A stretch of 64,000 nucleotides of DNA from Phallusia mammillata (taxonomy: Eukaryota): NCBI GenBank assembly GCA_965637545.1, contig OZ281497.1, positions 25,544,001 to 25,608,000 of the forward strand, in the 5' to 3' direction. Shown here piece by piece: positions 313-60,208 of the stretch. The stretch's first letter is position 1, and every line of letters begins with the position of its first letter. The position numbers were made by a program, and so were the translations under genes. The notes under the pieces were generated by a model that worked only from the letters and a program-made list of their open reading frames with translations, was not told where the DNA came from and searched no databases.

Positions 313-1725
313 ATGGATGTGACCCAAGATCAATTTAAGTTGTACAAACGAAGGTGGGCATTTCTTTTTGGAATATTTCTTCTACAATTTTGTGCCGGAA
401 TATCATTTTCCAGTTACGGACAAATCAACTGGTTTTATGTTGAGTTCTTCAAATCAACTCCAGCAACAGTGGATTGGATCACCAACGCAAGAAATATCAG
501 TGCTATAGTCATAACATTCCCCCTTGCCTTTCTCATTTTCAAGGATAAAATTGGGCTAAGAGGACTCGTACTTGTCATCGGCGGCAGCTCTACCGTTGGT
601 CTTCTGTTTGTTACTTTGTCTCTGATCGATCGTTCTCTGATTGCTCTGATAGTAATCGGACAAATCTTTTGCGGACTTTCAGAAACAGTTGCAGTCGGTG
701 CCCCATCAACTTTTGCTGTGCTTTGGTTTCCAGAAAATCAAGTCGGAACGGCGATTGCTTTAAATGTTGTCGGTCTGTATGTGGGAACTGAAGTTGGATA
801 CACATTGCCTTCATATCTTGTGACACCTTCGAACGATACCGTGGAATACAAAGGAATGTTAAGCCTTAAACATTTAGCAGCAGGACAACGTCAATTGCGT
901 TACTTGTATGGGGCATTTCTGGCAATTTCTACAACTGTAACTTGCTTGTTTGTGATTTTCTTAACCGACAAACCTCCAACGCCACCAACTCATGCCCAAG
1001 ATTTGAAGAATAAGGAATTGAAACCTGAAAAGTTTGCGAAGGAGTTTTTTAATGAAACTAAACAACTTTTTTTAATGCCCTCTTATGCTTTAATCTGCAT
1101 AGTCATCGGATTTATATTTCAACTTGAACTAATTGAAAATATGATGATGTCTGAAATCATAGCTGATCTTCACATTGCGAAAAATGTTGAGCCATCTACA
1201 TTAAGCGGTTATATCATGTGTACATTCGGCGTTGGCGCTATTGTTGGCCTCACTTCTGGTGGCAAAGTAGTCGACCGTTTCAAAAGATACAAGCTTATGG
1301 CGTTATGCGGGGGTACTGCAGACTTCCTCTCGATTCTGGGAATTGCCATCAGCGCAATATGCAAAAACCCTTCAGGTTTGTATGCATGTAACGTATTGTT
1401 TGGATTCTTGACTGGCTTTACTATCGTAGTTCTATTTGAAATGGCTACACAACTGACTTATCCGATTGACGAGACGCTGGTGAACAATTGGATGACCGGA
1501 ATTCAAACTTTAATCGCTTTGCTGATGGGCATTCTCGCAAGGGTCATGTTTCATCATTGGAAGAGTATTGGGGTGCTTGCCTTTCAATGTGCTTGTGTGT
1601 TGATGGCTCTATTGATGCTAACCTTAGTTTCTTCGAGGAATCGTAGATTGGAAGTTGATGACCAAAGAGTGACAGATGAAAAACCAGAAGATGCTGAAAC
1701 ACCATTACTCAGCGCTCAAAAATAA
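313..1725 (+). CDS. MFS transporter, FLVCR/SLC49-like, intact single-exon ORF (470 aa); copy A1
   Basis: About 12 hydrophobic segments. Motifs LYKRRW, WFPENQVGTA, TDKPPTPPT, VVDRFKRYK, FEMATQLTYP and SRNRRLEV parallel recalled FLVCR motifs (WFGxxEVSTA, KEKPxxPPS, ILDYTKTYK, FEFAVEITYP). Confidence 0.9.
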   Translation: MDVTQDQFKLYKRRWAFLFGIFLLQFCAGISFSSYGQINWFYVEFFKSTPATVDWITNARNISAIVITFPLAFLIFKDKIGLRGLVLVIGGSSTVGLLFVTLSLIDRSLIALIVIGQIFCGLSETVAVGAPSTFAVLWFPENQVGTAIALNVVGLYVGTEVGYTLPSYLVTPSNDTVEYKGMLSLKHLAAGQRQLRYLYGAFLAISTTVTCLFVIFLTDKPPTPPTHAQDLKNKELKPEKFAKEFFNETKQLFLMPSYALICIVIGFIFQLELIENMMMSEIIADLHIAKNVEPSTLSGYIMCTFGVGAIVGLTSGGKVVDRFKRYKLMALCGGTADFLSILGIAISAICKNPSGLYACNVLFGFLTGFTIVVLFEMATQLTYPIDETLVNNWMTGIQTLIALLMGILARVMFHHWKSIGVLAFQCACVLMALLMLTLVSSRNRRLEVDDQRVTDEKPEDAETPLLSAQK

Positions 1726-2948
1726 TATAAAACACACCGATCTCTAAAACTTGTCTTATAATTATGTAGAGCAAGTCGTCTTTGTACATATTTGTTGTTT
1801 TACCATGCTGTTTCAATGCGTTTTTTTGTGGTTAGGAACTTTTGTTGAAATAAGATGATGAAAATGCCTAATTTTTTGTATGTATCTTAAACGAACGGTG
1901 AAAAACTTCAGACTTATTAAAGTTTACAGTATGCTGATATACACGCGACTGTTGCGTTTGATGTCATACAGTTTATAATGGTAAATCGTGATTATACCAT
2001 ACCTCTATAAACTTGATATCATATACGTTAAAAGAGTACGCAATTGTGTGAAAAAAGTACAAAGTTTGTATTTAGGAAACGAAATATTTGAAATATAAAA
2101 CTTCATTGCTTGGAAGTCACGATATGTACATATTGTTTATCAAATGACTTTCCCATGTCGCCATAACCGGATACCATTTGGTATATGTGCAATATACGTT
2201 TAAAGATCTAAAAAATGTTCGTGATAGCTTTGCTCATACATCGGAGCAGAATACCACAACTTAACGTTTCAAATACCAGATTTTTTATGTCTGATTGTGA
2301 AAGTTACTTTCGAGGTCCAATATGTTGGCTTTTCTAATAAACAACATGACATGCTAAAGTTCGGTAGCGATTGCATTACTGTATATTAGGGAATGATAAC
2401 GCTTTTTTCAAAACTTTTTCAACCTCATAACAGTTCTGGTTAGTTTAAGTTAAATTGGTTGCCCTTTATATGCACAAACTCAACTTGATAAGAAATTTCT
2501 CCCAGATGGTACGAACGAACAGTATTTTGTATTTTAGGGTTATTGCGCTATTCGGATAAATATAACCATTATCAGGTGCCAGTTTGGAATTTTTGAACAG
2601 TGTCATTCATTTACGGTATATCGAGCGCCAGAATGTTGTTCATTAGGGCAATTTAAAACTTTTTTAAAAGAATACAACAGTTACAATAAAAAAACATTTT
2701 CGTTACTCTAGCTTGGCTAGGAATAACAATGAAGGTCTCTCGTGCCACAAGAAACGTTCTGAGGAACGACGATTAAGCGGCTTTCATTTGGCCATCAGAA
2801 CCTGTGAGTTCAACCCCCCGTCATATGCAATCGTCTGTACCCGTGCATGTTCGTGTGGTCGGTTGTGATCCTACCGTAGAACATTCCCAAAATACAGAAA
2901 TCAATCATGACTCAAATAGCAGGACACTTAACTTATTAGCCCATTTTT

Positions 2949-3167
2949 TTAGTATCCTTGCTGTTTCGTGAAACTGTTCAACGATGACCATGTGAGGAAA
3001 TGGTCTGGCTTTACATTCTGTGACAGTATTTTTTTAATAAATGTAACCATCCAAGTAGCCAGTTGCTGGACTAACCTAATGCCCAGCAGTCCCAAACCGC
3101 CATGTTTAAGACTATTGTCTATTGTGTTTGTTTTCCGGAGAAATCTTTGTAATGGTCTGTCAATCAA
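2949..3167 (-). mobile_element. Possible small L1/Tx1-type ORF2 remnant
   Basis: Minus-strand translation ...KHGGLGLLGIRLVQQLATWMVTFIKKIL resembles the GGLGL motif C-terminal to the RT of L1/Tx1 LINEs. Short and degenerate. Confidence 0.35.
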
Positions 3168-3322: not shown

Positions 3323-4493
3323 CTAATTCATTGACGAGATTGGAAATAGCAGCAGTATGCTAATAAACAAACACGCACATTGACAGGCAAGCACTCCAAT
3401 GCCTCGCCAGTGCTGTAACATGACCCCTGCGAGTAGGCCTACGAGAAAAACGATCGCTGATTGGATCCCGGTCATCCAAGTGTTGACCAGTGTTTCGTCG
3501 TACAGAATCCAAACAATGCGTTGCATGCGTATATACCTGAAGTGCTTCTGTATATTACACTAATGGCAATTCCTAAGTTTAAAAAAAGGTCCATGATACT
3601 TCCACATATTGTCAGAAGTTTGTATCTTTTGCACCAGTCAACGAATTTGCCTCCAAATCCAAAGCCCACGATAGCACCAAAACTGGACATGCACATAAAG
3701 TAACTGCCCAAACGTACTTGTTGTGAAATGTGTATGTCAACAATGATTTCAGACATCATCATATTTTGAAACATGCCTACATGGAACAAAACATATGATA
3801 GCATGGAAAAAAGACCTTTGTTTGACGAAAGAAAACCTTTGCAGTTTTCTCAACTTTTACATCCTTATTCTTTACATCTTGTGCAACTGTTGGTGGTGCG
3901 GGAGGCTTATCGGTCAAGAAAATCACAAACAAAATGGTTACAGCTACAGATATGGCCAGAAATCTGCCATAGGTGTAACGCAATTGACGTTGTCCTGCTG
4001 CTAAAGCTCCAAGGCTTGAAATTCCTTTGTGTTTTAATGTATGGTTTGAATGTAACACAAGATATGAAGGCAATGTGTATCCAACTTCATTTTCCACATA
4101 GACTTACAACATTTAAAGCAATTGCTGTTCCGACTTGATTTTCTGGAAACCAAAGCACAGCAAAAGAGGAAGGCACCCCCAAACCTACAGCTGCTGACAG
4201 TCCGCAAAAAATTTGTCCAATTACTATCATAGGAGACCGATTGTCGAACTGCCGGCGCTGACTAGTATAAGCGTTTTAAGGCCAATTTTGTTCTTGAAAA
4301 TAAAAAAGGCAAGAGGAAATGTGATAAATATGACGCTGATATTTCTTGCGTTGGTGATCCAATCCACTTGTGCTGGAGTTGCATTGAAGAACTGAACGTA
4401 AAAACTATTTAGTTGCCCGTACCTGGAGAACTATATTCCGACAAAACACTGTAGAACAAATAGTCCGAACAGAAACCGCTGGTATAATTTCAT
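3323..4493 (-). pseudogene. Decayed FLVCR-like MFS pseudogene (P-type), convergent with copy A1
   Basis: Minus strand reads MKLYQR..., has an in-frame TAG at 4431-4433, then DWITNARN. Later segments (ENEVGYTLPSYLV, MMSEII, DETLVNTWMTGIQ) are spread over three frames. Confidence 0.9.
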
Positions 4494-4617
4494 GTCCTAT
4501 GTAATTTCCATCTTTGTTCCAAATCTTATATTTTCTTGATTGTCCAATATTATATTCCGATTTTTTGCGATTTCTAAAAATGCTTTGGAAGATAATAGAG
4601 TCTATTATCTATTAAAT

Positions 4618-6114: not shown

Positions 6115-7527
6115 TTATTGTTGAGAGCCGAGTAATGGTGTTTTAGCATCTTCAGGTTTTTCATCTGTCACTTTTTCGTCACGAACTTCCAATCTACGAT
6201 TCCTCGAAGAAACTAAGGTTAGCATCAGTAGAGCCATCAACACACAAGCACATTGAAATACAAGCACCCCAATACTCTTCCAATGTTGAAACATGATCCT
6301 TGCAAGAATGCCCATCAGCAAACCTATTAAAGTTTGAATTCCGGTCATCCAATTGTTAACCAGCGTCTCGTCGATCGGATAAGTCAACTGTGTGGCCATT
6401 TCAAACAGAACTACGATAGTAAAGCCAGTCAAGAATCCAAACAGTGCGTTACATGCATATAAGCCTGAAGGGTTTTTGCATATTGCGCTGATGGCAATTC
6501 CCAGAACCGAAAGGAAGTATGCAGTACTCCCGCATAACGCCATAAGCTTGTATCTTTTGAAACGGTCGACTACTTTGCCACCAGAAGTGAGGCCAACAAT
6601 AGCGCCAACGCCGAATGTACACATGATATAACCGCTTAATGTAGATGGCTCAACATTTTTCGCAATGTGAAGATCAGCTATGATTTCAGACATCATCATA
6701 TTTTCAATTAGGACAAGTTGAAATATAAATCCGATGACTATACAGATTAGAGCATAAGAGGGCATTAAAAAAAGTTGTTTAGTTTCATTAAAAAACTCCT
6801 TCGCAAACTTTTCAGGTTTTTCTTCCCCATTCTTCAAATCTTGGGCATGAGTTGGTGGTGTTGGAGGTTTGTCGGTTAAGAAAATCACAAACAAGCAAGT
6901 TACAGTTGTAGAAATTGCTAGAAATGCCCCATACATGTAACGCAAATGACGTTGTCCTGCTGCTAAATCTTTAAGACTTAACATTCCTTTGTGTTCCACG
7001 GTATCGTTCGAAGGTGTCGCAAGATATGAAGGCAATGTGCATCCAACTTCATTTCCTACATACAGACCGACAACATTTAAAGCAATTGCTGTTCCAACTT
7101 GGTTTTCTGGAAACCAAAGCACTGCAAAAGTTGATGGGGCACCGACTGCTACCGTTTCTGAAAGTCCGCAAAAGATTTGTCCGATTACGATCAGAGCAAT
7201 CAGAGAACGATCGATCAGAGACAAAGTAACAAACAGAAGACCAATGGTAGAGCTGCCGGCAATCACAAGTACGAGTCCTCTTAGTCCTATTTTATCCTTA
7301 AAAATGAGAAAGGCAAGGGGAAATGTTATGAATATAGCACTAATATTTCTTGCGTTGGTGATCCAATCCACTGTTGCTGGAGTTGATTTGAAGAAATCAA
7401 CATAAAACTAGTTGATTTGTCCGTAACTGGAAAATGATATTCCGGCACAAAATTGTAGAAGAAATATTCCAAAAAGAAATGCCCACCTTCGTTTGTACAA
7501 CTTAAATTGATCTTGGGTCACATCCAT
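6115..7527 (-). pseudogene. Full-length FLVCR-like MFS copy A2 with one nonsense codon (W>stop) early in the ORF
   Basis: Same length as A1 (1413 bp), with ATG at 7527. The codon that is TGG in A1 (INW) is TAG here (plus-strand cta 7408-7410). The rest is open (418-aa ORF in the track). Confidence 0.85.
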
Positions 7528-8200: not shown

Positions 8201-8329
8201 GTTGATAAAATACCAAAGGAGGGCGCAAAGAGCATTTAAGAATCTTTAAGAGCACAATTGTGAAAAAATACTGAGGGATAGGGCTATTAGGGTTGAGACG
8301 AGGTTTTATAATAAAAATAACAAGTTGAA

Positions 8330-8450
8330 ACCAGTTGATTTGTCCGTAACTGGCGAATGATATTCCGGCACAAAATTGCAAAAGAAATAATCCGAAAAGA
8401 AATGCCCACCTTCGTTTGTACAACTTAAATTGCTCTTAGATAACATCCAT
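8330..8450 (-). pseudogene. 5' fragment of an FLVCR-like copy (first ~40 codons only)
   Basis: Reverse complement encodes MDVI*EQFKLYKRRWAFLFGLFLLQFCAGISFASYGQINW, then runs into MITE sequence. Its upstream 8450-8590 matches the upstream of A1 (170-312). Confidence 0.85.
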
Positions 8451-11768: not shown

Positions 11769-12416
11769 CAAGGATTGCCCATGTGACTCTCAACACAATC
11801 AAACAGCTTGCTTAGTATTAACGTTTTGACATGCATAGGCAGCGAATCTAGATTAACAGCAGGAACTTAGCTGAACTTAAGCCTGCGCGGAATTCGTCCC
11901 CGAAAGCGTCCTGGGTTCTTACCCTGTGAAAAAACGTTATTCCTGGCTGCAATAGCTTATTTATACGTTTGTTTTATTGTCCTCGAAACTCGTTTATTTG
12001 TAATTTAGTTACTGGGTGAGCGCGGCCATGTTATTCCGGAGAACTAAATCTTAAAACGAAGTAAGGGTTACATTGATAACACGAAAATCGTAAAAGACGC
12101 AGAAGCACGAACATAAAAATAAATAAAACGTGGCACGAACATACTCATGATTCTGAAAAAATACCCCATATGTTACAGCGTTGGCAGAAACGATTGAATA
12201 CATCAATTTCCTGATACTAGTACAGGAAATGACAAACGGATAAATTCTCAACACTAACCAACATAAACAACTGTCATGAATGTTGACACAAAAGCCGAGC
12301 AGACCCAAATGATAATTATTTTGATTCCATCAAAAGTAAAAAATAAATAATCCTTAAATCCCGTTAACCACCCTAATGTAGAGACTTTTCTATATACATC
12401 GTGTAGATATAAACAA

Positions 12417-15044: not shown

Positions 15045-16085
15045 TAATATAGTTTTTACATTCAGTTCTTTAACGAACAAGTGGATTGGATCACCAACGC
15101 AAAAAATACCAGCGCCATATTTATCACATTTCCCCTTGCCTTTTTCATTTTCAAGGACAAAATTGGCCTTAAAACGCTTATATTAGTCAGCGCCGGCAGT
15201 TCAACAATCGGTCTTCTGTTTGTTACTTTGTCTTTCATCAACCGTTCGTTGTTTGCTCTGATAGTAATTGGGCAAATCTTTTGCGGACTTTCACAAACTG
15301 TGGGTGTAGCAGCGCCATCAACTTTTGCTGTGCTTTGGTTTCCAGAAAATCAAGTCGGAACAGCAATAGCTTTAAATGTTGTCGGTCTGTATGTGGGAAA
15401 TGAAGTTGGATACACATTGCCTTCATATCTTGTGACACCATCAAACCATACATTGAAACACAAAGGAATTTCAAGCCTTGGAGCTTTAGCAGCAGGGCAA
15501 CGTCAATTGCGTTACACCTATGGCAGATTTCTGGCCATATCTGCCGCTTTAGCTATTTTGTTTCTGATTTTCTTGACTGATAAGCCTCTCACACGCCACA
15601 TTTGCACAAGATCTGAAGAATAAAGATATAAGAGTTGATAAGACTACAAAGTTTTTCATTTGTCAAACAAAGTTGCTGTTTTCCATGCTCTCATATGTTT
15701 TGTTATGTGTTGTCTTCGGAATTTTGTTCCATGCAGGTATGTTTGAAACTATGATGATGTCTGAAATCATTGCTGACTTACAGATTTCCCCCTCCGTTTT
15801 GGGTTACATCATGTGCACATCTAGTTTGGGTGCCATCGTGGGCTTTGGATTTGGCGGCAAATTTGTTGCCCGGTGCAAAAGATACAAACTTCTGGCAATA
15901 TGTGGAAGTATCATGGACTTTTTTCCAAATTTCATTAGTGTAATATACAGAAGCACTCCAGGTATATACGCATGTAACGCATTGTTTGGATTTTGTACAG
16001 GATTTATTAACGTTGCACTGTTTGAAATGGCCACGCAGCTGACCTATACGGTGGATGAGACGCTGGTCAACACTTGGGCCTATCT
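15045..16085 (+). pseudogene. Decayed FLVCR-like MFS pseudogene (P-type), unit 1
   Basis: TM1 is missing. Two ORF fragments (15081-15623, 15673-16092) are separated by a frameshift. Ends at DETLVNTW. Confidence 0.9.
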
Positions 16086-16877: not shown

Positions 16878-18290
16878 TTATTGTTGAGAGCTGAGTAATG
16901 GTGTTTCAGCATCTTGAGGTTTTTCATCTGTCACTCTTTCGTCATCAACTTCCAATCTACGATTCCTCGAAGAAACTAAGGTTAGCATCAATAGAGCCAT
17001 CAACACACAAGCGCATTGAAAGGCAAGCACCCCAATACTCTTCCAATGTTGAAACATGACCCTTGCAAGAATGCCCATCAGCAAAGCGATTAAAGTTTGA
17101 ATTCCGGTCATCCAATTGTTCACCAGCGTCTCGTCAATCGGATAAGTCAGTTGTGTGGCCATTTCAAATAGAACCACAATAGTAAAGCCAGTCAAGAATC
17201 CAAACAGTGCGTTACATGCATATAAACCTGGAGGGTTTTTGCATATTGCGCTAATGGCAATTCCCAGAACCGAAAAGAAGTCTGCAGTACCCCCACATAA
17301 CGCCATAAGCTTGTATCTTTTGAAACGGTCGACTACTTTGCCACCGGATGTGAGGCCAACAATAGCGCCAACTCCGAATGTACACATGATATAACCGCTT
17401 AATGTAGATGGCTCAACATTTTTCGCAATGTGAAGATCAGCTATGATTTCAGACATCATCATATTTTCTATTAGGACAAGTTGAAATATAAATCCGATGG
17501 CTATGCAGATTAAAGCATAAGAGGGCATGGAAAAAAGTTGTTTAGTTACATTAAAAAACTCTTTTGCAGACTTTTCAGGTTTCAATTCCTTATTCTTCAA
17601 ATCTTGGGCATGAGTTGGTGGTGTTGGAGGTTTGTCGGTTAAGAAAATCACAAACAAGCAAGTTACAATTGTAGAAATTGCCAGAAATGCCCCATACATG
17701 TAACGCAACTGACGTTGTCCTTCTGTTAAATCTTCAAGGCTTAACATTCCTTCTTGTTCCACGGTATCGTTCGAAGGTGTCACAAGATATGAAGGCAATG
17801 TGTATCCAACTTCATTTCCCACATACAGACCTACAACATTTAAAGCAATCGCCGTTCCGACTTGATTTTCTGGAAACCAAAGCACTGCGAAAGTTGATGG
17901 GGCACCGACTGCTACAGTTTCTGAAAGTCCGCAAAAGATTTGTCCGATTACTATCAGAGCAATCAGAGAACGATCGATCAAAGACAAAGTAACAAACAGA
18001 AGACCAATGGTAGAGCTGCCGGCGATGATAAGCACGAGTCCTTTTAGTCCAATCTTATCCTTGAAAATGAGAAAGGCAAGGGGGAATGTTATGAATATAG
18101 CGCTGATATTTCTTGCGTTGGTGATCCAATCCACTGTTGCTGGAGTTGATTTGAAGAACTCAACATAAAACCAATTGATTTGTCCGTAACTGGCGAATGA
18201 TATTCCGGCACAAAATTGTAGAAGAAATAATCCCAAAAGAAATGCCCATCTTCGTTTGTACAACTTAAATTGCTCTTGGATAACATCCAT
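16878..18290 (-). CDS. FLVCR/SLC49-like MFS transporter, intact (470 aa from MDVIQEQ); copy A3
   Basis: Open ORF nearly identical to A1. ATG at 18290 by homology; an in-frame ATG also lies at 18299. The track's 18353 start is non-ATG. Confidence 0.9.
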   Translation of the reverse strand: MDVIQEQFKLYKRRWAFLLGLFLLQFCAGISFASYGQINWFYVEFFKSTPATVDWITNARNISAIFITFPLAFLIFKDKIGLKGLVLIIAGSSTIGLLFVTLSLIDRSLIALIVIGQIFCGLSETVAVGAPSTFAVLWFPENQVGTAIALNVVGLYVGNEVGYTLPSYLVTPSNDTVEQEGMLSLEDLTEGQRQLRYMYGAFLAISTIVTCLFVIFLTDKPPTPPTHAQDLKNKELKPEKSAKEFFNVTKQLFSMPSYALICIAIGFIFQLVLIENMMMSEIIADLHIAKNVEPSTLSGYIMCTFGVGAIVGLTSGGKVVDRFKRYKLMALCGGTADFFSVLGIAISAICKNPPGLYACNALFGFLTGFTIVVLFEMATQLTYPIDETLVNNWMTGIQTLIALLMGILARVMFQHWKSIGVLAFQCACVLMALLMLTLVSSRNRRLEVDDERVTDEKPQDAETPLLSSQQ

Positions 18291-20738: not shown

Positions 20739-20822
20739 TCATTTCTGAAAAAGCCAGACCCCTTTCTATTAAGAAAAGGTGTCTGAAATCTGCTGTCTGG
20801 CATTAGTGGTGTTGCAAATACA

Positions 20823-32095: not shown

Positions 32096-33508
32096 TTATT
32101 GTTGAGAGCTGAGTAATGGTGTTTCAGCATCTTGAGGTTTTTCATCTGTCACTCTTTCGTCATCAACTTCCAATCTACGATTCCTCGAAGAAACTAAGGT
32201 TAGCATCAATAGAGCCATCAATACACAAGCGCATTGAAAGGCAAGCACCCCAATACTCTTCCACTGTTGAAACATGACCCTTGCAAGAATGCCCATCAGC
32301 AAAGCGATTAAAGTTTGAATTCCGGTCATCCAATTGTTCACCAGCGTCTCGTCAATCGGATAAGTCAGTTGTGTGGCCATTTCAAATAGAACCACAATAG
32401 TAAAGCCAGTCAAGAATCCAAACAGTGCGTTACATGCATATAAACCTGGAGTGTTTTTGCATATTGCGCTAATGGCAATTCCCAGAACCGAAAAGAAATC
32501 TGCAGTACCCCCACATAACGCCATAAGCTTGTATCTTTTGAAACGGTCGACTACTTTGCCACCGGATGTGAGGCCAATAATAGCGCCAACTCCGAATGTA
32601 CACATGATATATCCGCTTAATGTAGATGGCTCAACATTTTTCGCAATGTGAAGATCAGCTATGATTTCAGACATCATCATATTTTCAATTAGGACAAGTT
32701 GAAATATAAATCCGATGGTTATGCAGATTAAAGCATAAGAGGGCATGGAAAAAAGTTGTTTAGTTACATTAAAAAACTCTTTTGCAGACTTTTCAGGTTT
32801 CAATTCCTTATTCTTCAAATCTTGGGCTTGAGTTGGTGGTGTTGGAGGTTTGTCGGTTAAGAAAATCACAAACAAGCAAGTTACAATTGTAGAAATTGCC
32901 AGAAATGCCCCATACATGTAACGCAACTGACGTTGTCCTTCTGTTAAATCTTCAAGGCTTAACATTCCTTCTTGTTCCACGGTATCGTTCGAAGGTGTCA
33001 CAAGATATGAAGGCAATGTGTATCCAACTTCATTTCCCACATACAGACCTACAACATTTAAAGCAATCGCCGTTCCGACTTGATTTTCTGGAAACCAAAG
33101 CACTGCGAAAGTTGATGGGGCACCTACTGCAACAGTTTCTGAAAGTCCGCAAAAGATTTGTCCGATTACGATCAGAGCAATCAGAGAACGATCGATCAAA
33201 GACAATGTAACAAACAGAAGACCAACGGTAGAGCTGCCGGCGATGACAAGCACGAGTCCTTTTAGTCCAATCTTATCCTTGAAAATGAGAAAGGCAAGGG
33301 GGAATGTTATGAATATAGCACTGATATTTCTTGCGTTGGTGATCCAATCCACTGTTGTTGGAGTTGATTTGAAGAACTCAACATAAAACCAATTGATTTG
33401 TCCGTAACTGGCGAATGATATTCCGGCACAAAATTGTAGAAGAAATAATCCCAAAAGAAATGCCCATCTTCGTTTGTACAACTTAAATTGCTCTTGGATA
33501 ACATCCAT
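32096..33508 (-). CDS. FLVCR/SLC49-like MFS transporter, intact (470 aa); copy A4
   Basis: Duplicate of A3 with a few substitutions. ATG at 33508. Confidence 0.9.
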   Translation of the reverse strand: MDVIQEQFKLYKRRWAFLLGLFLLQFCAGISFASYGQINWFYVEFFKSTPTTVDWITNARNISAIFITFPLAFLIFKDKIGLKGLVLVIAGSSTVGLLFVTLSLIDRSLIALIVIGQIFCGLSETVAVGAPSTFAVLWFPENQVGTAIALNVVGLYVGNEVGYTLPSYLVTPSNDTVEQEGMLSLEDLTEGQRQLRYMYGAFLAISTIVTCLFVIFLTDKPPTPPTQAQDLKNKELKPEKSAKEFFNVTKQLFSMPSYALICITIGFIFQLVLIENMMMSEIIADLHIAKNVEPSTLSGYIMCTFGVGAIIGLTSGGKVVDRFKRYKLMALCGGTADFFSVLGIAISAICKNTPGLYACNALFGFLTGFTIVVLFEMATQLTYPIDETLVNNWMTGIQTLIALLMGILARVMFQQWKSIGVLAFQCACVLMALLMLTLVSSRNRRLEVDDERVTDEKPQDAETPLLSSQQ

Positions 33509-39859: not shown

Positions 39860-41275
39860 TCATTGTTGAGAGACGAGCAACGTTTGTTGCGCTTCCTGTT
39901 CTGTTTCCTCTGTGTCATTGTTGTCCTCAACTTCCAATCTGTGATTCCTGGACGAGACTAGCAACAATAGTAGGATCCCCATCAACACGCAAGCACTTTG
40001 AAAAGCAAATACAGCGATAGTTCTCCAGTGTTGAAACATTACTCTTCCAAGAACGGCCATTAACAAAGCGACAGCCGATTGAATGCCGGCCATCACAGTG
40101 TTGACAAGCGTTTCGTCTGTCGGATAAGTCACCTGTGTGACCATTTCGAACAAAACGACAACCGTACATCCTGCAAAGAATCCAAATAGTGCATTACATG
40201 CGTACAACCCTGGAATTACGTTGTAAATTGCGTTAACAGCGACCCCCACGGTCGACATAAGTTCTAGAGTACTTCCACAGAGAGCGAGTATCTTGTATCG
40301 CTTGCAACGGTCAACGACTTTTCCACCAAGGGTTAGTCCTATAATGGCGCCGACACTGTATGTACTCATGATATAACCACTTAACGTAGAAGATGCAACG
40401 TGGTTTGCGATGCGAATATCTGTAATGACTTCAGACATCATAATGTTTTCAACAAAGACTGTGTCCAATATAAATCCGATGACAATACAGACCAAAACAT
40501 AAGAACGACTGGTAAAAAGTCCCTTCGACTGATGAAAGAATTCCTTTATTGGTTTTTGTACTTGTTCGCTTCTGTTCTTGAGCTCTTGTGCCACTGTTGG
40601 TGGTGTGGGAGGTTTATCAGTTAAGAAAATCAAAAACAAGATAGTTACAGCTGCCGATGTTGCCAGAAATGACCCGTACATGTAACGCAATTGGCGTTGT
40701 CCTGAAGCTAAGGCACCCTGGGTTAACACCTTATTGACTTGTAAAGTATGGTTTGAAGGTGTTACAAGGTATGAAGGCAATGTGTAACCGATTACATTGC
40801 CGGTGGATAGACCAAGAACGTTCAGTGCTATCGCCGTTCCAACTTGGCTTTCTGGAAACCAAAGCACAGCAAAAGTGGAAGGCATGGCCAAACCCAATGT
40901 ATCGGCAATCCCAGATACAGTTTGTCCAATTACTATTACAGCAAACAACGAACGATCGATGAAAGACAGAGTAACAAACAAAAGACCGATGGTCGAGCTG
41001 CAAGCAATTATTAGAACCAGCCCTTTAAATCCGATCTTGTTGGTAAAAATCATTAAAGCAATAGGAAATGTAATAAGTATAGCGCTGATATTTCTTGCAT
41101 TGGTGATCCAATCCACTGCTGCTGGAGTTGATTTGAAAAACTGAACGTAAAAATTGTTGATTTGTCCGTAACTGGCAAACGATATTCCGGCACAAAGTTC
41201 CAAAATAAAAAATCCCAATAGAAATGCCCATCTTCGTTTGTACAATATTATTTGGTTGGAAATTTCCAGAGACAT
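39860..41275 (-). CDS. FLVCR/SLC49-like MFS transporter, intact (471 aa); divergent copy B
   Basis: Open ORF with all family motifs. Confidence 0.9.
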   Translation of the reverse strand: MSLEISNQIILYKRRWAFLLGFFILELCAGISFASYGQINNFYVQFFKSTPAAVDWITNARNISAILITFPIALMIFTNKIGFKGLVLIIACSSTIGLLFVTLSFIDRSLFAVIVIGQTVSGIADTLGLAMPSTFAVLWFPESQVGTAIALNVLGLSTGNVIGYTLPSYLVTPSNHTLQVNKVLTQGALASGQRQLRYMYGSFLATSAAVTILFLIFLTDKPPTPPTVAQELKNRSEQVQKPIKEFFHQSKGLFTSRSYVLVCIVIGFILDTVFVENIMMSEVITDIRIANHVASSTLSGYIMSTYSVGAIIGLTLGGKVVDRCKRYKILALCGSTLELMSTVGVAVNAIYNVIPGLYACNALFGFFAGCTVVVLFEMVTQVTYPTDETLVNTVMAGIQSAVALLMAVLGRVMFQHWRTIAVFAFQSACVLMGILLLLLVSSRNHRLEVEDNNDTEETEQEAQQTLLVSQQ

Positions 41276-42880: not shown

Positions 42881-43907
42881 TTAGGCAAGTTTTGAAAGTA
42901 TATTCTGGCGCACATGTAAACAAATATTGTCGATTAGTTGTATTGCGTTTATCCCGTTTTCGTTGTTAACTTCCAATCTGCGATTTCTCGACGAAACTAA
43001 AGACAACAACAGAACACCTATCAACACACATGCGTATTGAAACGCAAGTACGCCGATGCTCTTCCAATGTAGAAACATGACCCTAAACGCCCAACAAGAA
43101 GGTGATCACCGTCTGAATACAAGCTAACCAAGTATTGACGAGGGTTTCATCAACAGGGTATGTCACTTGTGTGGTCATTTCAAACAGTACAACGGCACTA
43201 AACCCAACAAAGAATCCAAAGAATGCATTGCAAGCGTATATTCCAGGAATATTCCTGTATACCGCACTGATTGCAATTCCCAAGGTTGAAAGAAGTATTA
43301 GTAAACATCCGCTTATCGCTAGAAATTTGTAATTTTTGCAACGGTCAACAACTTTCCCTCCAACTCCAAGGCCAATAATTGCGCCAGAACTCAACAAGCA
43401 CATGATGTAACCGCTTAACGTTGAAGCTGAAACATGATGTGAGATTTGAAGGTCAGTAATGATTTCAGACATGAACATACTTTCAATTAATTCTAGTTGC
43501 AACACTAACCCACTAACAATACAGATTAAAGCAAAGGATGGAATAGTAGAAAGTTGCTTCGTTTGATAAAGAAATTCTTTTGCAGACCTTTGACTTCTAA
43601 CAGCTTTATTCTTCAGATCTTGAGCTAAAGTAGGTGGTGTGGGAGGAGAAGACCAATTGTCGAACTGCAGGAGATTGCAAGAACGAGTCTTTTGAGTCCA
43701 ATTTTATCCTTGAAAACCAATAAGGCAAGGGGAAATGTGATGAATATAGCACTAATGTTTCTTGCGTTGGTGATCCAATCCACGAGTTCCGGTGTGGTTT
43801 TAAAAAGCTGAACATAAAACCAGTTGATTTGAAAATTGTAAAACAAATAACCCGAAAAGAAACACCCGTCTTCGTTTGTACAACTTAAGTTGATTATTAA
43901 CATCCAT
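42881..43907 (-). pseudogene. FLVCR-like MFS pseudogene with internal deletions and frameshifts
   Basis: Starts MDVNNQLKLYKRR. TM3 (IGLL) is joined directly to the PPTPPT region at ~43650. Separate fragments 43083-43505 and 42881-43078. Confidence 0.88.
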
Positions 43908-48116: not shown

Positions 48117-49514
48117 ATGGAATCTAGCGACAACGTGACTTTGTATACCCGCAGATGGGTCTTCCTTCTAGGGCTCTTCATCTTGCATTTCTTATCAGGA
48201 ATTTCCTTCGCAAGTTACGGTCAAATCAGCAGCTTTTACGTTCAGTTCTTCAAGGCCTCCCACGCACAAGTGGATTGGATCACCAACGCGAGAAACATCG
48301 GAGCTATATTTCTCACTGTTCCATTCGCTTGGATGATCTTCAACGGCAAAATGAAAATGCGGGCTGGAATTTTAATTATGGCAATCAGCTCAACAGTTGG
48401 ACTATTGTTAGTGACTGTTTCGTTTCTCGATCGTTCTTTTTTTGCTCTTATTATTGTTGGACAAATTTTCTGCGGGATTGCTGAAACTGTTAGTGTGATT
48501 ACCCCAACCACTTTCGCCCTGTTCTGGTTTCCAAAAAAGCAAGTTCGTCTGGCGATTTATCTGAACATGATGGGCCTGTATGTTGGGGATGACTTGGGGT
48601 ACACGATTCCGCCGAAGCTGGTACATACATTTAATCACACCAATGGAGACGATCATGATCTTAACCCTGAGGAAATGGCATCGGCGCAACGTTCACTTCG
48701 CAACATGTACGCGGTATACTTGGGCATATCTGCTATTGTGACCGTCTTGTTTGCAATCTTCCTGACTGATACACCTCCCACGCCACCTAGGGCTGCTGAA
48801 ATACAAAGTTACATTCACACACATATGGATAAAACGATGACAGAATTTTGGAAAAAGACCAAAACACTTTTCACAGACCCAGCTTTTGTATTGATCAGCA
48901 TAGTCATTGGGTTGATATTCCAGTTAGGCCTAATCGAAACGATGATGATGTCTGAAATCGTAGAACGGCTTGACATTTCTTACCACCAGAGCCCAGCATT
49001 GTTAAGTGGAGAAATCATGAGCATGTACGGCATAGGTGCAGTGGTGGGTCTCTTTGCAGGTGGAATGATTATCCACTACATCAAGAAATACAACTTGCTT
49101 TCAATAGTGGGAACTACAGCGGTTTTTCTGTCCACAGTTGCAATCATTATAAGCGTCCGTATGAGAAACACTCAGGCGATATTTGTAACCAACGTTTTGT
49201 TCGGGATTTTTACGGGGGCGGCAGAAGTCTGGCTCTTTGATATGGCTACAGAGTTGGCCTATCCAATTGACGAGTGTCTATCACATACGTGGATATCCGG
49301 TATTGAAACTGCAGTCGCCTTGTTGATTGGAATACTTGCTCGAGTCACGTTCAATGCCTGGGAGAGCATTGGAGTCCTGTCATTCCAATGCGCTTGCGTG
49401 TTTGTGAGCATCTTGTTGTGTTGCTTGGTTTTGTCATTTGGACGCAAACTAGAGACAGAGACGTCAACAAGCAGTGCATCTACCTCACAAACACCTTTGC
49501 TTAATCCTCAGTAA
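48117..49514 (+). CDS. FLVCR/SLC49-like MFS transporter, intact (465 aa); divergent copy D
   Basis: Open ORF with LYTRRW, WFPKKQV, TDTPPTPP and FDMATELAYP variants of the family motifs. Confidence 0.9.
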   Translation: MESSDNVTLYTRRWVFLLGLFILHFLSGISFASYGQISSFYVQFFKASHAQVDWITNARNIGAIFLTVPFAWMIFNGKMKMRAGILIMAISSTVGLLLVTVSFLDRSFFALIIVGQIFCGIAETVSVITPTTFALFWFPKKQVRLAIYLNMMGLYVGDDLGYTIPPKLVHTFNHTNGDDHDLNPEEMASAQRSLRNMYAVYLGISAIVTVLFAIFLTDTPPTPPRAAEIQSYIHTHMDKTMTEFWKKTKTLFTDPAFVLISIVIGLIFQLGLIETMMMSEIVERLDISYHQSPALLSGEIMSMYGIGAVVGLFAGGMIIHYIKKYNLLSIVGTTAVFLSTVAIIISVRMRNTQAIFVTNVLFGIFTGAAEVWLFDMATELAYPIDECLSHTWISGIETAVALLIGILARVTFNAWESIGVLSFQCACVFVSILLCCLVLSFGRKLETETSTSSASTSQTPLLNPQ

Positions 49515-54953: not shown

Positions 54954-56393
54954 ATGAGCCCTAACGTTAAATACGAACCAATTGAAAGCACGTGGAAGTT
55001 GTACAAACGAAGATGGGTGTTTTTAATCGGACTTTTAATACTTCAATTCTTCGCTGGCATCTCGTTCAGCAGCTACGGTCAAATCAGTGACTTTTACGTT
55101 AAGTTCTTCAATGCGTCGCATGCACAAGTGGATTGGATCACCAACGCAAGAAATATCAGCGCTATATTCATCACATTTCCACTCGCATGGTTAGTGTTCA
55201 AAGGAGTCGTCCGTTTGAGGTGTCTTATACTTATTGTTGCTGTATGTTCCACGTCTGGGTTATTTCTTGTCACAATTTCACTGCTGAGTCCACACTTTTT
55301 CCCATTCATTGTCATCGGCCAAGTGCTATGTGGCCTTTCCGAGACCGTAGGGATTGCAGTGCCATCTATATTTGCTGTGCTTTGGTTTCCAGAATCACAA
55401 GTAGGAACCGCCATCGCTATTAACATCATGGGTGTATGTATTGGCGATGGAACAGGTTACCTATTGCCCCCAACTCTTGTATATACCAGCCACAAGTCAA
55501 TCAACGCTACAGGCATTATTGTGGAGTCTCAAGATGACAGTGACTTTATGGAAAAGAGTCAGCATTCACTTTTAATCATGTATGGTTCATTTTTAGCGAT
55601 ATCAGCAGTTGTTTCTGTTTTCTTCTTCATTTTTATCACCGACAAACCACCCAGTCCGCCAACTACAGCACAGTATGTGAAAAACACGGCGCTTTATGTT
55701 CATCGATCCTTCTACGAGTTCCTTCAAGAAACCAAGTCACTCATCCTAAACCGCTCATACATCCTTATCTGCATTGTCGTGGGATTTGTTTTCCAGATTG
55801 TTCTTCTGGAAAACCTAATGATGTCAGAAATTATCAAAACAAGCTCAGTGGTCGGCGATATAAATCCGGCAATTTTGAGTGGTTTTATAATGAGTTTGTA
55901 TAGTATTGGGAGCACCATAGGGCTCGGCGTCGGAGGAAAAATAGTGGACAAATGCAAACGTTACAAAATGTTAGCGATTGTAGGGACAACCATGCTTTTC
56001 CTTTCAACGGTTGGAATCGCTTTCGGTGTGCAGCATAAACACATGATAACCTTATTAGTCTCCAACGGACTGTTCGGATTTTTCTCGGGTTCTACAGAAG
56101 TCGTAATCTTCGAAATAGCAACGCAACAGACTTACCCGAAAGATGAAACTATGGTGAATACGTGGATGACGGGGATTCAAACTCTTATTGGATTTAGTTT
56201 AGGAATTTTTGGTCGTATCATTTTCACCGCATGGGGCAGTATTGGTGTGCTGGTATTTCAAAGCCTTTGTATTTTCGTTTGTATCATTCTCGTGTTTTGC
56301 GTTTCGTCGCGAAATCGCAGACTCGAAGTGAACGACAGCGACCTCGAGTGGTCAGTTGATAGCGATCCCACAACACCACTGATTACCAACTAA
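54954..56393 (+). CDS. FLVCR/SLC49-like MFS transporter, intact (479 aa); divergent copy E
   Basis: Open ORF with all family motifs; longer TM5-6 loop. Confidence 0.9.
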   Translation: MSPNVKYEPIESTWKLYKRRWVFLIGLLILQFFAGISFSSYGQISDFYVKFFNASHAQVDWITNARNISAIFITFPLAWLVFKGVVRLRCLILIVAVCSTSGLFLVTISLLSPHFFPFIVIGQVLCGLSETVGIAVPSIFAVLWFPESQVGTAIAINIMGVCIGDGTGYLLPPTLVYTSHKSINATGIIVESQDDSDFMEKSQHSLLIMYGSFLAISAVVSVFFFIFITDKPPSPPTTAQYVKNTALYVHRSFYEFLQETKSLILNRSYILICIVVGFVFQIVLLENLMMSEIIKTSSVVGDINPAILSGFIMSLYSIGSTIGLGVGGKIVDKCKRYKMLAIVGTTMLFLSTVGIAFGVQHKHMITLLVSNGLFGFFSGSTEVVIFEIATQQTYPKDETMVNTWMTGIQTLIGFSLGIFGRIIFTAWGSIGVLVFQSLCIFVCIILVFCVSSRNRRLEVNDSDLEWSVDSDPTTPLITN

Positions 56394-57802: not shown

Positions 57803-58776
57803 GTCTTAGCAAATGGCTTTGTTTGCTATTGCCGAGTTTAAGGCTGATCCCAGGATCCCAGGAGGAGATTGGATTTCTTTACTGGTGTGGAATTTCTAAC
57901 TTTTTGATCTAATTTTATTAAACATCAAGAAGTGTAAGAACTAAAATGTATGCAGTCATATAAACGGGTTTATTCAGAAGCATCGCACGCATAAAAGTTG
58001 CTTTGTAGGCATTGTGTGGATTTGGGGGTTACAAAACATGTGTTTATGAACGATTAAACACGTGAAACTCTTTTTAATTTTTTTAGGTCATGCTCGGGCT
58101 TGTGTTTTTTTAAATACGAATAAGGATTAAACTCGTACTATGCTACATTTGTCGGGTAAAATTTCTTTTTTCGTTTACCTTGTGTTTCAGGTTTGTTGAA
58201 AGGGTTATATTTCACTATGACATAAACTTACCTCACATTGTTGAAATTGAATTTTCCTGCTAATTGCAATCAACAATTATTAATCTTTGTTGTTTTGTGC
58301 AGTTCAATTAAACATATTAAACTTTGACCATGGGCCAAACGAGAATTGCTCTAGTTCAAAATGTAAATGGACCAGCTAATACTTTCAAAGTGTTACTAAG
58401 CTGTTTGTAGTTGTTTAGATCGCTATGTCACAAGTTATGCTGTTTCCGGATTAAAACTTTGCTTTCTATTGTTGTTTTCATCCTCCATTGACCCCTTTAA
58501 GCGGGCAGCAGCGCAGTCATGTGACGAAAATCGTTGGTATTAAAAACATTTTGTAAACACAAAACAAAGATCAAATGAGAAAAGGGCAAGTAAGGCAAAT
58601 GGTAGAATGCAAAACTGCTATATATAAGGTAACCGACAGAGTTGCTGAGTTAAAATAGAAGAATTAAATATTACTCGGTTGGTGAAAAGAAAAGTGGCAA
58701 ATATTATCTTCTTTGCAAAGGTTTGAAAACTCTAGCCAAGAGACATATAGCTTGACCAAAGGTTTAACTTAACAGA

Positions 58777-60208
58777 ATGGAAAATGAAATAGGAAATGGG
58801 AAAGTGAAAAGAGATGTCCAGGGCCCAATCTTGTACAAACGAAGATGGGCATTTCTTTTCGGGCTCTCCATTTATCAGTTTTTTGGCGGAATCTCATTTG
58901 CCAGTTACGGTCAAATAAGTAGCTTCTACGTTCAGTTCTTCAACGCCTCGCATGTAGAAGTGGATTGGATCACCAACGCAAGGAATATCAGCGCTATATT
59001 CATCACATTTCCTTTAGCTTGGATGATTTATCAAGGCAAGTTAGGATTAAGAAAACTGGTTCTAATAATTTCAGTGAGTTCAACGCTTGGACTTTTCCTG
59101 GTCACCCTGTCATTAGTAGATCGTTCTCTGTTTGTTCTAATTGTGGTCGGACAAATTCTATGCGGACTTTCGGAGTCTGTTGCAGTCGCTGCACCTTCCA
59201 CTTTTGCTGCTTTGTGGTTCCCAGAAAACCAAGTGGGGTCGGCAATAGCGTTTAACGTTATTGGGATTTGCTTTGGCGATGGGACAGGTTACACTTTGCC
59301 ATCCGTTCTCACAGCGCCGTCTAACCAAACTTTGACAGATGGAACTAATCTAACATTAAATGAACTGGCATCAGGGCAACTTGGATTGCGCAACATGTAC
59401 GGTACCTTTCTGGTTATATCCGCTGTTGTAACAATATTCTTGGCGATTTTTTTCACTGATAAACCTCCCACACCACCAACATTTGCTCAAGAGCTAAAGA
59501 ACTCGGACTCTCAGGAACCTAGAACGTTAAAATTGTTTATGCGAGACACAAAACTGCTTTTTACCAATCCATCTTATGTTATGATATGCGTGGTCATTGG
59601 GCTTATATTCCAATTGGCATTGATTGAAAATATGATGATGTCTGAAATTATTGCCACAACTGGATTGCCATTCAATGGTACTTCGGATCAACTCAGCGGT
59701 TACGTTATGGCTATGTTCAGTATAGGAGGAATCCCGGGAATGCTTATCGGCGGAAAACTCGTAGACCGATGCAAAAGATTCAAACTTCTTTCTATCTTCG
59801 GAAACACAACTGTACTTCTTTCAACAGCAGCACTTGCTGTAAGCGTTTTGTTGAAAAACTCTGTTGGAATGTTTGTAAGCAATGCATTGTTTGGTTTCTT
59901 TACCGGTACAGTAAGCCGTTGTTTTGTTCGAAATGGCCACACAGCTGACTTATCCAGTGGACGAGACACTGGTCAACACTTGGATGACCGGCATTCAAAT
60001 GACCATTGCTCTATTCCTTGGACTTTTCGGGAGGCTTACCTTTGATAACTGGGGAAGTGGAGGGGTGCTATTCTTTCAGTGCGCTTGTGTGGTGTTTGCT
60101 TTATTTTTATGCTGTTTGGTTTCCTCGAGAAATCGCAGACTGGAAGTTGGTTCCAGAGATGAGGAAAATCAACATACTATGCATTCACCTTTAATCCCTT
60201 CACATTGA
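58777..60208 (+). pseudogene. Full-length FLVCR-like copy F with a single +1 frameshift (or sequencing error)
   Basis: Removing one A at 59913/59914 (gtaagcc > gta gcc) joins ORFs 58777-60045 and 59924-60208 into ...GTVAVVLFEMATQLTYP...SPLIPSH*. Confidence 0.8.

What the first reader, a model, noticed from the sequence alone, without database searches (positions are those of the whole stretch)
313..60208. Putative substrate cavity rewired: aromatic choline cage lost, paralog-specific acidic residues gained
A by-eye alignment to recalled human FLVCR1 puts F at the TM1 Trp (ISFSSY vs FQWIQY) and Leu at both the TM5 Asn and the TM7 Tyr. The TM4 Gln is E (A copies, D, E, F) or D (B, C). Other helix positions toggle between paralogs (seen). 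TM1: Q/E/E/H/Q/Q in A/B/C/D/E/F. TM5: GTEVG or GNEVG (A), GNVIG (B), GYGVG (C), GDDLG (D), GDGTG (E, F). TM7: QLEL/QLVL (A), DTVF (B), QLSL, QLGL, QIVL, QLAL before a conserved E. TM10: FTIV, CTVV, FSDV, AAEV, STEV. TM11: Q, but E in D. Inference: these are not choline uniporters. They may carry different cationic substrates (amines, polyamines, alkaloids or metal complexes), possibly proton-coupled.
Basis: partly seen in the sequence, partly recalled or inferred. Interest (0 to 1): 0.75.

Follow-up and report, generated by a model that had tools for sequence, protein, structure and literature searches.

The report
Ascidian FLVCR-like transporters with rewired pocket
This sea-squirt (Phallusia mammillata) window holds part of a large tandem array of intronless FLVCR-like membrane transporters that have replaced the choline-binding residues of their vertebrate relatives with charged, copy-specific ones, so they very probably carry something other than choline, although databases name them choline transporters.

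Summary
HMMER and MAFFT alignments to solved FLVCR1/2 place F at the TM1 Trp, Leu at the TM5 Asn and the TM7 Tyr, and E/D at the TM4 Gln. The paralog-specific toggles are as listed.

- The TM2 cage Tyr is an invariant Arg.
- Copy A2 carries a stop codon, and copy F is frameshifted exactly in TM10.
- The TM11 Gln lies one residue off the FLVCR Gln.
- The window is a slice of an array of about 27 loci, within a family of at least 70 intact intronless genes.
- Two multi-exon canonical FLVCR genes with the full choline cage lie elsewhere in the genome.

The family forms an ascidian-only clade beside canonical FLVCR. Across that clade the choline-contact positions are among the most variable transmembrane sites. 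This window's subclade has the most acidic pockets.

The genes are under purifying selection (omega about 0.2), and paralog D appears transcribed. A site-wise omega test found no significant positive selection.

Best reading: these are functional transporters of non-choline substrates with diversified specificity. Cationic substrates and proton coupling are plausible but untested. This is a new variant of a known kind, of moderate interest.

The parts
313..1725 (+). Copy A1, intact intronless FLVCR-like MFS gene (470 aa). Pocket: F32, R60, N61, E124, L155, T159, E160, E272, L273, E275, Q398.
   Evidence: ORF; Pfam MFS_1 E=1.8e-24; PDB FLVCR2 E=1e-27
3326..4511 (-). Degraded pseudogene copy with many stop codons
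   Evidence: tblastn pieces at 42-60% identity; 9 stops reported in the own-genome search
6115..7527 (-). Copy A2. It is 94% identical to A1 but has TAG at codon 40 (W40). It is otherwise under constraint (omega 0.25 vs A1), so the inactivation is recent or is an allele or assembly artefact.
8301..8450 (-). N-terminal fragment of a copy (residues 1-50)
15054..16077 (+). Frameshifted, truncated pseudogene copy
16878..18290 (-). Copy A3, intact. Essentially the UniRef Phallusia mammillata 'FLVCR2-like' protein P0001. N159, V272.
30248..31302 (+). Frameshifted pseudogene copy, the duplicate of 15054-16077
32096..33508 (-). Copy A4, intact. dS 0.028 to A3, inside a 6.8-kb tandem duplication.
39860..41275 (-). 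Copy B, intact (471 aa). E25, D124, N159/V160, D270, V272, F273.
42903..43861 (-). Pseudogene copy in two frames with stop codons
45514..46923 (+). Copy C, intact (469 aa). E25, D124, Y159, S272, D371. One small contig in one probable-RNA run.
48117..49514 (+). Copy D, intact (465 aa), the most acidic pocket of the clade: H25, E124, D159, D160, E275, E371, E398, against R60. AF2 model available. Contigs from four probable-RNA runs cover 48066-49676 only.
54954..56393 (+). Copy E, intact (479 aa). E124, V155, D159, E371.
58777..60208 (+). Copy F. The reading frame shifts near 59907-59918 inside TM10, so it is a pseudogene or carries an assembly indel.
61129..61839 (-). Degraded pseudogene fragments (residues about 200-448)

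Best explanation
The window is the middle of a 112-kb tandem array on contig C4 (25.515-25.627 Mb). The array holds about 18 intact and at least 9 broken copies. It belongs to a family of at least 70 intact intronless genes in the Phallusia mammillata genome. All named members of that clade are ascidian, and the clade branches beside, not within, the canonical FLVCR1/2 group.

The proteins keep the FLVCR/MFS fold and the loop motifs needed for rocker-switch cycling. The residues that bind choline in FLVCR1/2 are replaced. In this subclade there is a conserved core (F32, R60, N61, E/D124, Q270, E275, Q398). Around it lie copy-specific positions (25, 128, 155, 159, 160, 272, 371), several of which switch between acidic and neutral.

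The most likely reading is that these are functional secondary transporters whose substrate is no longer choline or ethanolamine. The shared charged core would recognise a common chemical group. The variable positions, three of them direct homologues of choline contacts, would tune specificity between paralogs.

For this acidic subclade, small organic cations or zwitterions are the best guess. The buried carboxylates, possibly paired with R60, would allow proton coupling.

Shown here: homology, fold, residue replacements, family size, purifying selection, retention of canonical orthologues, and probable transcription of D. Inferred: loss of choline transport, cavity orientation of positions 25, 160, 275, 371 and 398, substrate charge, and proton coupling.
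For: - Homology and fold.
- Pocket map: it agrees between HMMER and MAFFT. The contacts come from solved structures: PMC11168923, bioRxiv 10.1101/2023.10.05.561059 and PMC13160678.
- Mutant data: cage mutants abolish uptake in FLVCR1 (PMC10557757).
- Family size: at least 92 matches and 63 full-length uninterrupted ORFs in one own-genome search, with 8 more in a second search.
- Clade: 107 representatives at 50% identity form a clade with 100% SH-like support. All 7 named members are Styela, Ciona, Clavelina or Phallusia.
- Pocket variability across the clade: all 12 pocket sites lie at the 87th-99th percentile of TM entropy (Mann-Whitney p=1.5e-8) but are conserved in canonical FLVCR. Phylogeny-aware site rates are 1.24 vs 0.92, p=0.0015.
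- Selection: pairwise dN/dS is 0.18-0.31 and the codon-model omega is 0.216.
- Canonical orthologues: multi-exon FLVCR genes with W/Y-M/Q/N/F-Y/Q intact lie at C8:12.072-12.077 Mb and C1:11.731-11.738 Mb.
- Charge: TM-core acidic residues at appreciable frequency sit almost only in TM4, 5, 7 and 10. The subclade has the most acidic pocket charge in the clade.
- Expression: perfect contigs from four probable-RNA runs cover gene D plus about 50 nt upstream and 160 nt downstream, with none in the flanking intergenic DNA.
Against: - No transport data exist for any member.
- F32 is still aromatic, and other aromatics (Y35, F267, F269) are nearby, so a modified cation-pi site cannot be excluded.
- The invariant R60 in the pocket argues against a simple 'cation' reading.
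- Within the 28 local paralogs, pocket sites as a class do not evolve faster than other TM sites (p=0.48), and no site has omega significantly above 1. Copy-specific residues could therefore partly reflect relaxed constraint.
- Side-chain orientation could not be measured, because model coordinates are not returned.
- The TM7 and TM11 alignments are anchored by few conserved residues, and Q398 is offset by one from Q447.
- The runs used for expression are only guessed to be RNA.
Confidence: 0.6

Rival explanations
1. The copies are still choline/ethanolamine (or close analogue) facilitators with a remodelled site. F32 would supply the cation-pi contact, and E/D124 would replace the Gln as partner of the amine.
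For: The closest solved relatives are the choline transporters FLVCR2 and FLVCR1. Phe can make cation-pi contacts. In FLVCR1, Gln214 contacts the ethanolamine amine, and a carboxylate there could strengthen amine binding. NCBI names clade members as choline/ethanolamine transporters, but only by automatic transfer.
Against: Two of the three cage aromatics are lost, to Arg and Leu. Y153A and Y349A each greatly reduce uptake in FLVCR1. An Arg at the cage position should repel a quaternary ammonium. The genome already has two canonical FLVCR genes with the full site. Seventy or more copies with different pockets are hard to reconcile with one substrate.
Confidence: 0.12
2. The substrates of this subclade are zwitterions or anions (for example amino-acid-like, sulfonate or phosphate-bearing small molecules). 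R60 would bind the acidic group. The carboxylates would serve charge balance or proton coupling rather than cation binding.
For: R60 is invariant in the subclade at a position that directly contacts substrate in FLVCR. Other subclades of the family carry basic residues at pocket positions 29 and 368, with net charge up to +3, so the family as a whole is not cation-specific.
Against: Net pocket charge in the window copies is -1 to -5. Acidic residues recur at three homologues of choline contacts (124, 159, 272) and at 371. R60 may simply be salt-bridged to E124 or E275.
Confidence: 0.18
3. The array is mostly evolutionary debris: recently duplicated copies drifting toward pseudogenes, so the pocket differences carry no functional meaning.
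For: At least 8 of about 15 loci in the window are broken. No site shows omega significantly above 1, and the most variable pocket sites have omega 0.7-0.8, which is compatible with near-neutrality at those sites.
Against: Seven window copies and at least 70 genome copies keep full-length ORFs despite dS above 1 between them. Gene-wide omega is 0.18-0.31. A core of pocket residues is invariant across 28 paralogs. Gene D appears transcribed.
Confidence: 0.05

Closest known systems
FLVCR2 (SLC49A2) and FLVCR1 (SLC49A1), vertebrate choline/ethanolamine uniporters (PDB 8QCX, 8QCT, 8UBW, 8VZN, 9QU4)
   Same: 12-TM MFS fold, with TM-score 0.83/0.92 and rmsd 2.6-2.7 A for the model of copy D. They are the best sequence matches among solved structures (E 1e-27). 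The RRW start of TM1, the DW of TM2, the GQ of TM4, WFP, the PPxPP linker and the E...TYP..E loop motifs are conserved.
   Different: About 20-25% identity. No N-terminal extension, and intronless. Cage W/Y/Y becomes F/R/L. Q191 becomes E/D, N222 becomes L, and I226 and F324 are variable and sometimes acidic. The cavity is charged instead of neutral. The TM2-TM7b gate pair D124-R333 becomes D54-E281, and a new clade-wide Arg (R410) appears in TM11. They form a separate ascidian-only clade.
The canonical FLVCR orthologues of the same genome (multi-exon genes at C8:12.072-12.077 Mb and C1:11.731-11.738 Mb)
   Same: Same superfamily branch and the same organism.
   Different: They have introns. 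They keep NAFQWIQY, YM in TM2, AQVF in TM4, FGNQ in TM5, FY/YY in TM7 and SAQ in TM11, which is the full choline site. They are the likely true choline transporters of the animal.
SLC49A3 (MFSD7) and SLC49A4 (DIRC2)
   Same: Same SLC49 family. Some clade members were once auto-named SLC49A3-like.
   Different: SLC49A3-like proteins keep the TM1 Trp, TM4 Gln and TM5 Asn (rows P0011-P0014). They branch outside the FLVCR plus ascidian group. Two SLC49A3-like genes exist separately at C1:12.36-12.37 Mb.
Proton-coupled MFS transporters of cationic substrates with buried carboxylates (e.g. MdfA, VMAT2)
   Same: Membrane-embedded Asp/Glu in the cavity-forming helices. They appear as distant structural hits (MdfA 4ZOW, VMAT2 8XO9; E about 1e-8).
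   Different: Only the general fold is shared, with 13-14% identity. The positions of the carboxylates are not homologous. The resemblance is to a mechanism, recalled from general knowledge, and was not tested here.

Membership tests
Major facilitator superfamily | 12-TM fold of two six-helix bundles with a match to the MFS_1 profile | tested here: met
   Pfam PF07690 E 1e-23 to 3e-30 for all six copies. The AF2 model has 12 long helices, pLDDT 91.7 and pTM 0.90.
SLC49 / FLVCR family (broad sense) | Closest homologues by sequence and structure are FLVCR1/2 | tested here: met
   PDB phmmer hits are only FLVCR2/1, E 4e-28 to 7e-21. Foldseek ranks 1-12 are all FLVCR1/2, and the next hit is at E 5e-9.
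FLVCR1/2 orthologue group (choline/ethanolamine transporters) | Phylogenetic placement inside the canonical FLVCR clade | tested here: not met
   The window copies fall in a 107-representative clade (SH-like 100) that is separate from the 27-row canonical clade (FastTree only). Canonical orthologues are found elsewhere in the genome.
FLVCR1/2 orthologue group (choline/ethanolamine transporters) | Aromatic cage: TM1 Trp, TM2 Tyr, TM7 Tyr (FLVCR1 W125, Y153, Y349) | tested here: not met
   F32, R60 and L273 in the window copies. This holds in the HMMER and MAFFT alignments.
FLVCR1/2 orthologue group (choline/ethanolamine transporters) | Neutral polar contacts: TM4 Gln, TM5 Asn, TM11 Gln | tested here: not met
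   E/D124 and L155. FLVCR2 Q447 aligns to T399, with a Gln at 398, one residue off.
FLVCR1/2 orthologue group (choline/ethanolamine transporters) | Uncharged central cavity | tested here: inconclusive
   Charged residues occupy homologues of the cavity residues: R60, E124, D159, E272. Side-chain orientation could not be measured because no coordinates are available.
FLVCR1/2 orthologue group (choline/ethanolamine transporters) | Na+- and pH-independent uniport of choline/ethanolamine | not testable with these tools
   Needs uptake assays.
Proton-coupled MFS transporters | Buried titratable carboxylate, often paired with Arg, that is essential for coupling | tested here: inconclusive
   E/D124 is in 23 of 28 local paralogs, E275 in 24 of 28 and R60 in 27 of 28. 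E275 is in 50% of the whole clade and 0% of canonical FLVCR. Their role is not testable here.

The most novel reading that the evidence does not exclude
Ascidians evolved, probably from a retrocopy of FLVCR, a large and fast-diversifying repertoire of SLC49-derived transporters. The substrate pocket behaves like the ligand site of a chemoreceptor or detoxification family: conserved within subclades and different between them. The acidic-pocket array in this window would then be a set of proton-coupled carriers for polycationic or metal-complex substrates, tied to ascidian-specific chemistry such as blood-cell metal or amine accumulation.
Probability: 0.12. Interest if true: 0.8.

Novelty: new variant of a known kind. 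Interest (0 to 1): 0.5.

Why it matters
FLVCR1/2 were established as the main choline/ethanolamine transporters of animals only in 2023-2024, and annotation pipelines now spread that name.

In ascidians the name lands on at least 70 genes per genome that lack the experimentally essential cage residues. The true orthologues are two separate multi-exon genes. Recognising this prevents wrong functional transfer.

It also exposes a chordate lineage in which one SLC scaffold was multiplied and its pocket re-used for many chemistries. That gives a natural series of pocket variants on a fold with solved structures.

Finally, it provides candidates for the still poorly known small-molecule and metal handling of ascidians. 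I found no paper on this expansion in the searchable library.

Tried and rejected
I used minimum-change counts from treekit and a site-wise omega likelihood that sums over ancestors.
- The site-wise test gave 10 sites with omega above 1, all in loops or termini and none significant (largest LRT 2.4). Positive selection at cavity residues is not supported by this test.
- Within the 28 local paralogs, pocket-homologous sites as a class do not differ from other TM sites (mean changes 5.62 vs 5.64; omega p=0.48).
- I looked in three FLVCR structure papers for statements on the TM10 residue homologous to position 371 (FLVCR2 L419), and on S95, A227 and L327. I found none.
- The genomic context of one unnamed clade member (P0064) gave nothing useful.
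- Searches of earlier findings by place returned nothing. A search by word found three unverified first-reader notes on the same arrays.
- Literature searches for FLVCR or SLC49 together with ascidian, Ciona or tunicate found no relevant paper. One search call failed on phrase length.
- I considered a link to vanadium accumulation in Phallusia and did not adopt it. The clade is also expanded in Styela, Ciona and Clavelina, and nothing ties these genes to blood cells.

Full report
**What is in the window.** The window is G000:C4:25544001-25608000 of a 240-Mb assembly. Copy A3 is essentially identical to a UniRef protein of the ascidian Phallusia mammillata named 'FLVCR2-like' (P0001).

A tblastn scan with copy A1 finds 15-16 loci of one gene family on both strands, all without introns.
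- Seven copies are intact: A1 313-1725(+), A3 18290-16878(-), A4 33508-32096(-), B 41275-39860(-), C 45514-46923(+), D 48117-49514(+), E 54954-56393(+).
- A2 (7527-6115, minus strand) has TAG at codon 40.
- F (58777-60208) changes frame near 59907-59918, inside TM10.
- Six further loci are fragments or multiply broken copies.

**Checking the observation.** phmmer of A1 against all PDB chains returns only FLVCR2 (E 4e-28 to 6e-26) and FLVCR1 (E 7e-21), aligned over nearly the whole length. All copies match Pfam MFS_1.

An AlphaFold2 model of copy D, built with a 102-sequence alignment, has mean pLDDT 91.7 and pTM 0.90. Its twelve best Foldseek matches are the FLVCR1/2 structures (TM 0.83/0.92, rmsd 2.6-2.7 A, 20% identity). 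The next hits (SPNS2, DgoT, FucP, MdfA) are ten orders of magnitude weaker.

The choline contacts come from the structure papers:
- TM1 Trp, TM2 Tyr and TM7 Tyr form the aromatic cage.
- TM2 Met, TM4 Gln and TM11 Gln contact the hydroxyl end.
- TM1 Asn/Ala, TM4 Leu, TM5 Asn and Ile, and TM7 Phe line the pocket.

Using the native numbering of 8QCX in the HMMER alignment, and independently a 142-sequence MAFFT alignment, the map from FLVCR2 to A1 is:

| FLVCR2 | A1 |
|---|---|
| N98 | A28 |
| S99 | G29 |
| W102 | F32 |
| Y130 | R60 |
| M131 | N61 |
| Q191 | E124 |
| L195 | V128 |
| N222 | L155 |
| I226 | T159 |
| F324 | E272 |
| Y325 | L273 |
| Q447 | T399 |

Three points need qualification:
- The TM10 motif of F cannot be read, because the frame breaks there.

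**The wider picture.** Searching the whole assembly with A1 gives at least 92 matches, of which 63 are full-length and uninterrupted. A second search with a canonical-FLVCR profile adds eight more.
- The window sits in an array from 25.515 to 25.627 Mb with about 18 intact and at least 9 broken copies.
- Other arrays lie on C2 (14.89-14.92 Mb), C4 (7.2-7.8, 9.7-9.8, 20.98 and 21.43-21.47 Mb), C8 (15.33 and 15.58-15.67 Mb), C6, C5 and C1.

An exhaustive profile search of 1.84 billion representatives finds 201 clusters at E<1e-30. In a FastTree of 142 sequences, 107 of them form one clade with a long stem and SH-like support 100. A 27-row clade next to it holds the canonical FLVCR proteins, and SLC49A3- and SLC49A4-like proteins lie outside both.

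Every member of the large clade that carries a name is from an ascidian: Phallusia, Styela clava, Ciona intestinalis or savignyi, Clavelina lepadiformis. That is seven of seven. The current NCBI names are 'choline/ethanolamine transporter FLVCR1-like' or 'flvcr2a-like'.

The same genome also has two multi-exon genes whose exons read NAFQWIQY, DWLSMVYML, AQVFILGMPS, FGNQLGVAIGF, GSFYAISTLLNQ and SSGLLNASAQ. This is the complete choline site. They lie at C8:12.072-12.077 Mb and C1:11.731-11.738 Mb. Two SLC49A3-like genes are also present.

The window genes are therefore not the animal's FLVCR orthologues. They belong to an extra, lineage-specific family. Its lack of introns suggests descent from a retrocopy, which is an inference.

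**How the pocket evolves.** Across the 93-member core of the ascidian clade, all twelve pocket-homologous positions have 3.3-3.8 bits of entropy. That puts them at the 87th-99th percentile of all transmembrane positions (Mann-Whitney p=1.5e-8). In canonical FLVCR the same positions are more conserved than average.

Phylogeny-aware site rates show the same direction less strongly (1.24 vs 0.92, p=0.0015). The gap between the two measures means many pocket positions are fixed within subclades but differ between them. That is the behaviour of specificity-determining positions.

The 28 Phallusia paralogs closest to the window copies show this directly:
- G29, F32, R60, N61, Q270, E275, V372 and mostly E124 and Q398 are constant.
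- Positions 28, 128, 155, 159, 160, 272 and 371 change repeatedly.

Positions 272 (the F324 homologue) and 371 (TM10) are among the fastest-evolving mid-helix sites in both data sets.

Summing charges over 20 candidate pocket positions gives -5 to +3 across the clade, centred on 0 to +1. The window subclade is the acidic extreme (-1 to -5), and copy D is the most acidic of all. Acidic residues that recur in helix cores are confined almost entirely to TM4, TM5, TM7 and TM10, the helices that build the cavity.

**Selection.** Pairwise dN/dS among near paralogs is 0.18-0.31. A GY94 fit on 28 paralogs gives omega 0.216. These are constrained, functional genes. Even A2 has omega 0.25 against A1, so its stop codon is recent.

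Branch lengths, kappa and codon frequencies were fixed from the global fit. My likelihood at omega 0.2 was -27171, against IQ-TREE's -27162 at 0.216, which validates the code.

No site is significantly above 1. Pocket estimates run from 0.005 (G29) to 0.8 (272), and position 371 is at 0.7. As a class, pocket sites do not differ from other transmembrane sites within this subclade. Synonymous saturation (tree length 25.7 substitutions per codon) limits the power of this test.

**Expression.** Four runs of one study, guessed to be RNA, hold contigs with no mismatches that tile 48066-49676. That span is gene D plus about 50 nt upstream and 160 nt downstream. There are no joints and no contigs in the flanking intergenic DNA, and only one small contig lies in gene C. 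This fits an unspliced transcript of D, though contigs cannot prove RNA origin.

Words of A1 are held at 13-30% in probable-RNA runs of five studies. That is the share expected for a transcript a few percent different, such as an allele or A3/A4. I could not lay reads a second time.

**Mechanism.**
- Shown: the fold and the cytoplasmic loop motifs of a working MFS are kept (KIGLRG after TM2, GGKVVDRxKRYK after TM8, E376 and TYPxDE after TM10).
- Shown: the three cage aromatics, each required for choline and ethanolamine uptake in FLVCR1, are F, R and L here.
- Shown: the neutral cavity described for FLVCR1/2 now holds R60, E/D124 and E275, plus copy-specific D159, E160, E272, D/E371 and E398.
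- Inferred: choline uniport is lost.
- Inferred: the conserved charged core binds a group common to the substrates of this subclade, and the variable ring sets specificity.
- Inferred: the substrates are small cations or zwitterions, and the buried carboxylates permit proton coupling.

I give 0.6 to 'functional, non-choline, diversified specificity'. Within that, cationic is somewhat more likely than zwitterionic or anionic.

**Limits.**
Positions 124, 159 and 272 are homologues of residues that touch choline in solved structures.
- The orientation of positions 25, 160, 275, 371 and 398 is inferred from helix periodicity and from the rarity of lipid-facing carboxylates.
- The tree is FastTree only.
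- The TM7 alignment is anchored mainly by G266.

**Verdict.** This is a new variant of a known kind: an ascidian-specific, greatly expanded, intronless branch of the SLC49/FLVCR family with a rewired and diversified pocket. It is currently mis-named as choline transporters, and I found no description of it in the searchable literature.

Noticed in passing
window 20060-28474: A BEL/Pao-type LTR retroelement. Its 680-bp LTRs (20060-20739 and 27795-28474) are 99.1% identical. Three consecutive ORFs in the same frame (20823-21932, 21957-25127, 25179-27197) carry DUF1759, RVT_1, Peptidase_A17, integrase and DUF5641 domains. It is a young insertion, and I only describe it.
   Followed up: partly
window 11823-20059 and 28475-34430: A tandem segmental duplication with a period of about 6.8 kb (96-98% identity). 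Each unit holds one broken copy and one intact A copy (A3, A4). The LTR element sits inside the second unit, so it inserted after the duplication.
   Followed up: partly
window 35120-35944: An ORF with a zf-RVT domain (zinc-binding region of reverse transcriptases), probably a remnant of a non-LTR retrotransposon.
   Followed up: no
window 44662-44841: A short repeat held at very high depth (up to about 180) in the probable-RNA runs. The contigs run on into unrelated sequence on both sides, so it is a dispersed, transcribed repeat and not part of gene C.
   Followed up: no
A1 residues D54, E281, R410 (window about 472-474, 1153-1155, 1540-1542): The extracellular gate salt bridge of FLVCR2 (D124 in TM2 with R333 in TM7b) seems rewired. 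The Asp is kept (95% of the clade). The Arg position is E, Q or D. A new Arg at the outer end of TM11 is present in 97% of the ascidian clade and in about 6% of canonical FLVCR. A D54-R410 pair is a guess that needs coordinates.
   Followed up: partly
G000:C8:12072001-12077500 (L024) and G000:C1:11731001-11738500 (L025): Two multi-exon canonical FLVCR genes with the complete choline-binding residues. They are the likely true choline/ethanolamine transporters of this animal.
   Followed up: partly
window 250-1800: The two DNA runs that hold 95-97% of the words of the C-D region hold only 65-70% of the words of A1. This suggests haplotype divergence or collapsed or mis-assigned near-identical A copies in this part of the assembly.
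   Followed up: no
public annotation of clade members (P0128, P0039, P0163, P0177): NCBI's pipeline names these ascidian proteins 'choline/ethanolamine transporter FLVCR1-like/flvcr2a-like' although they lack the cage residues. This is a likely systematic over-annotation.
   Followed up: partly
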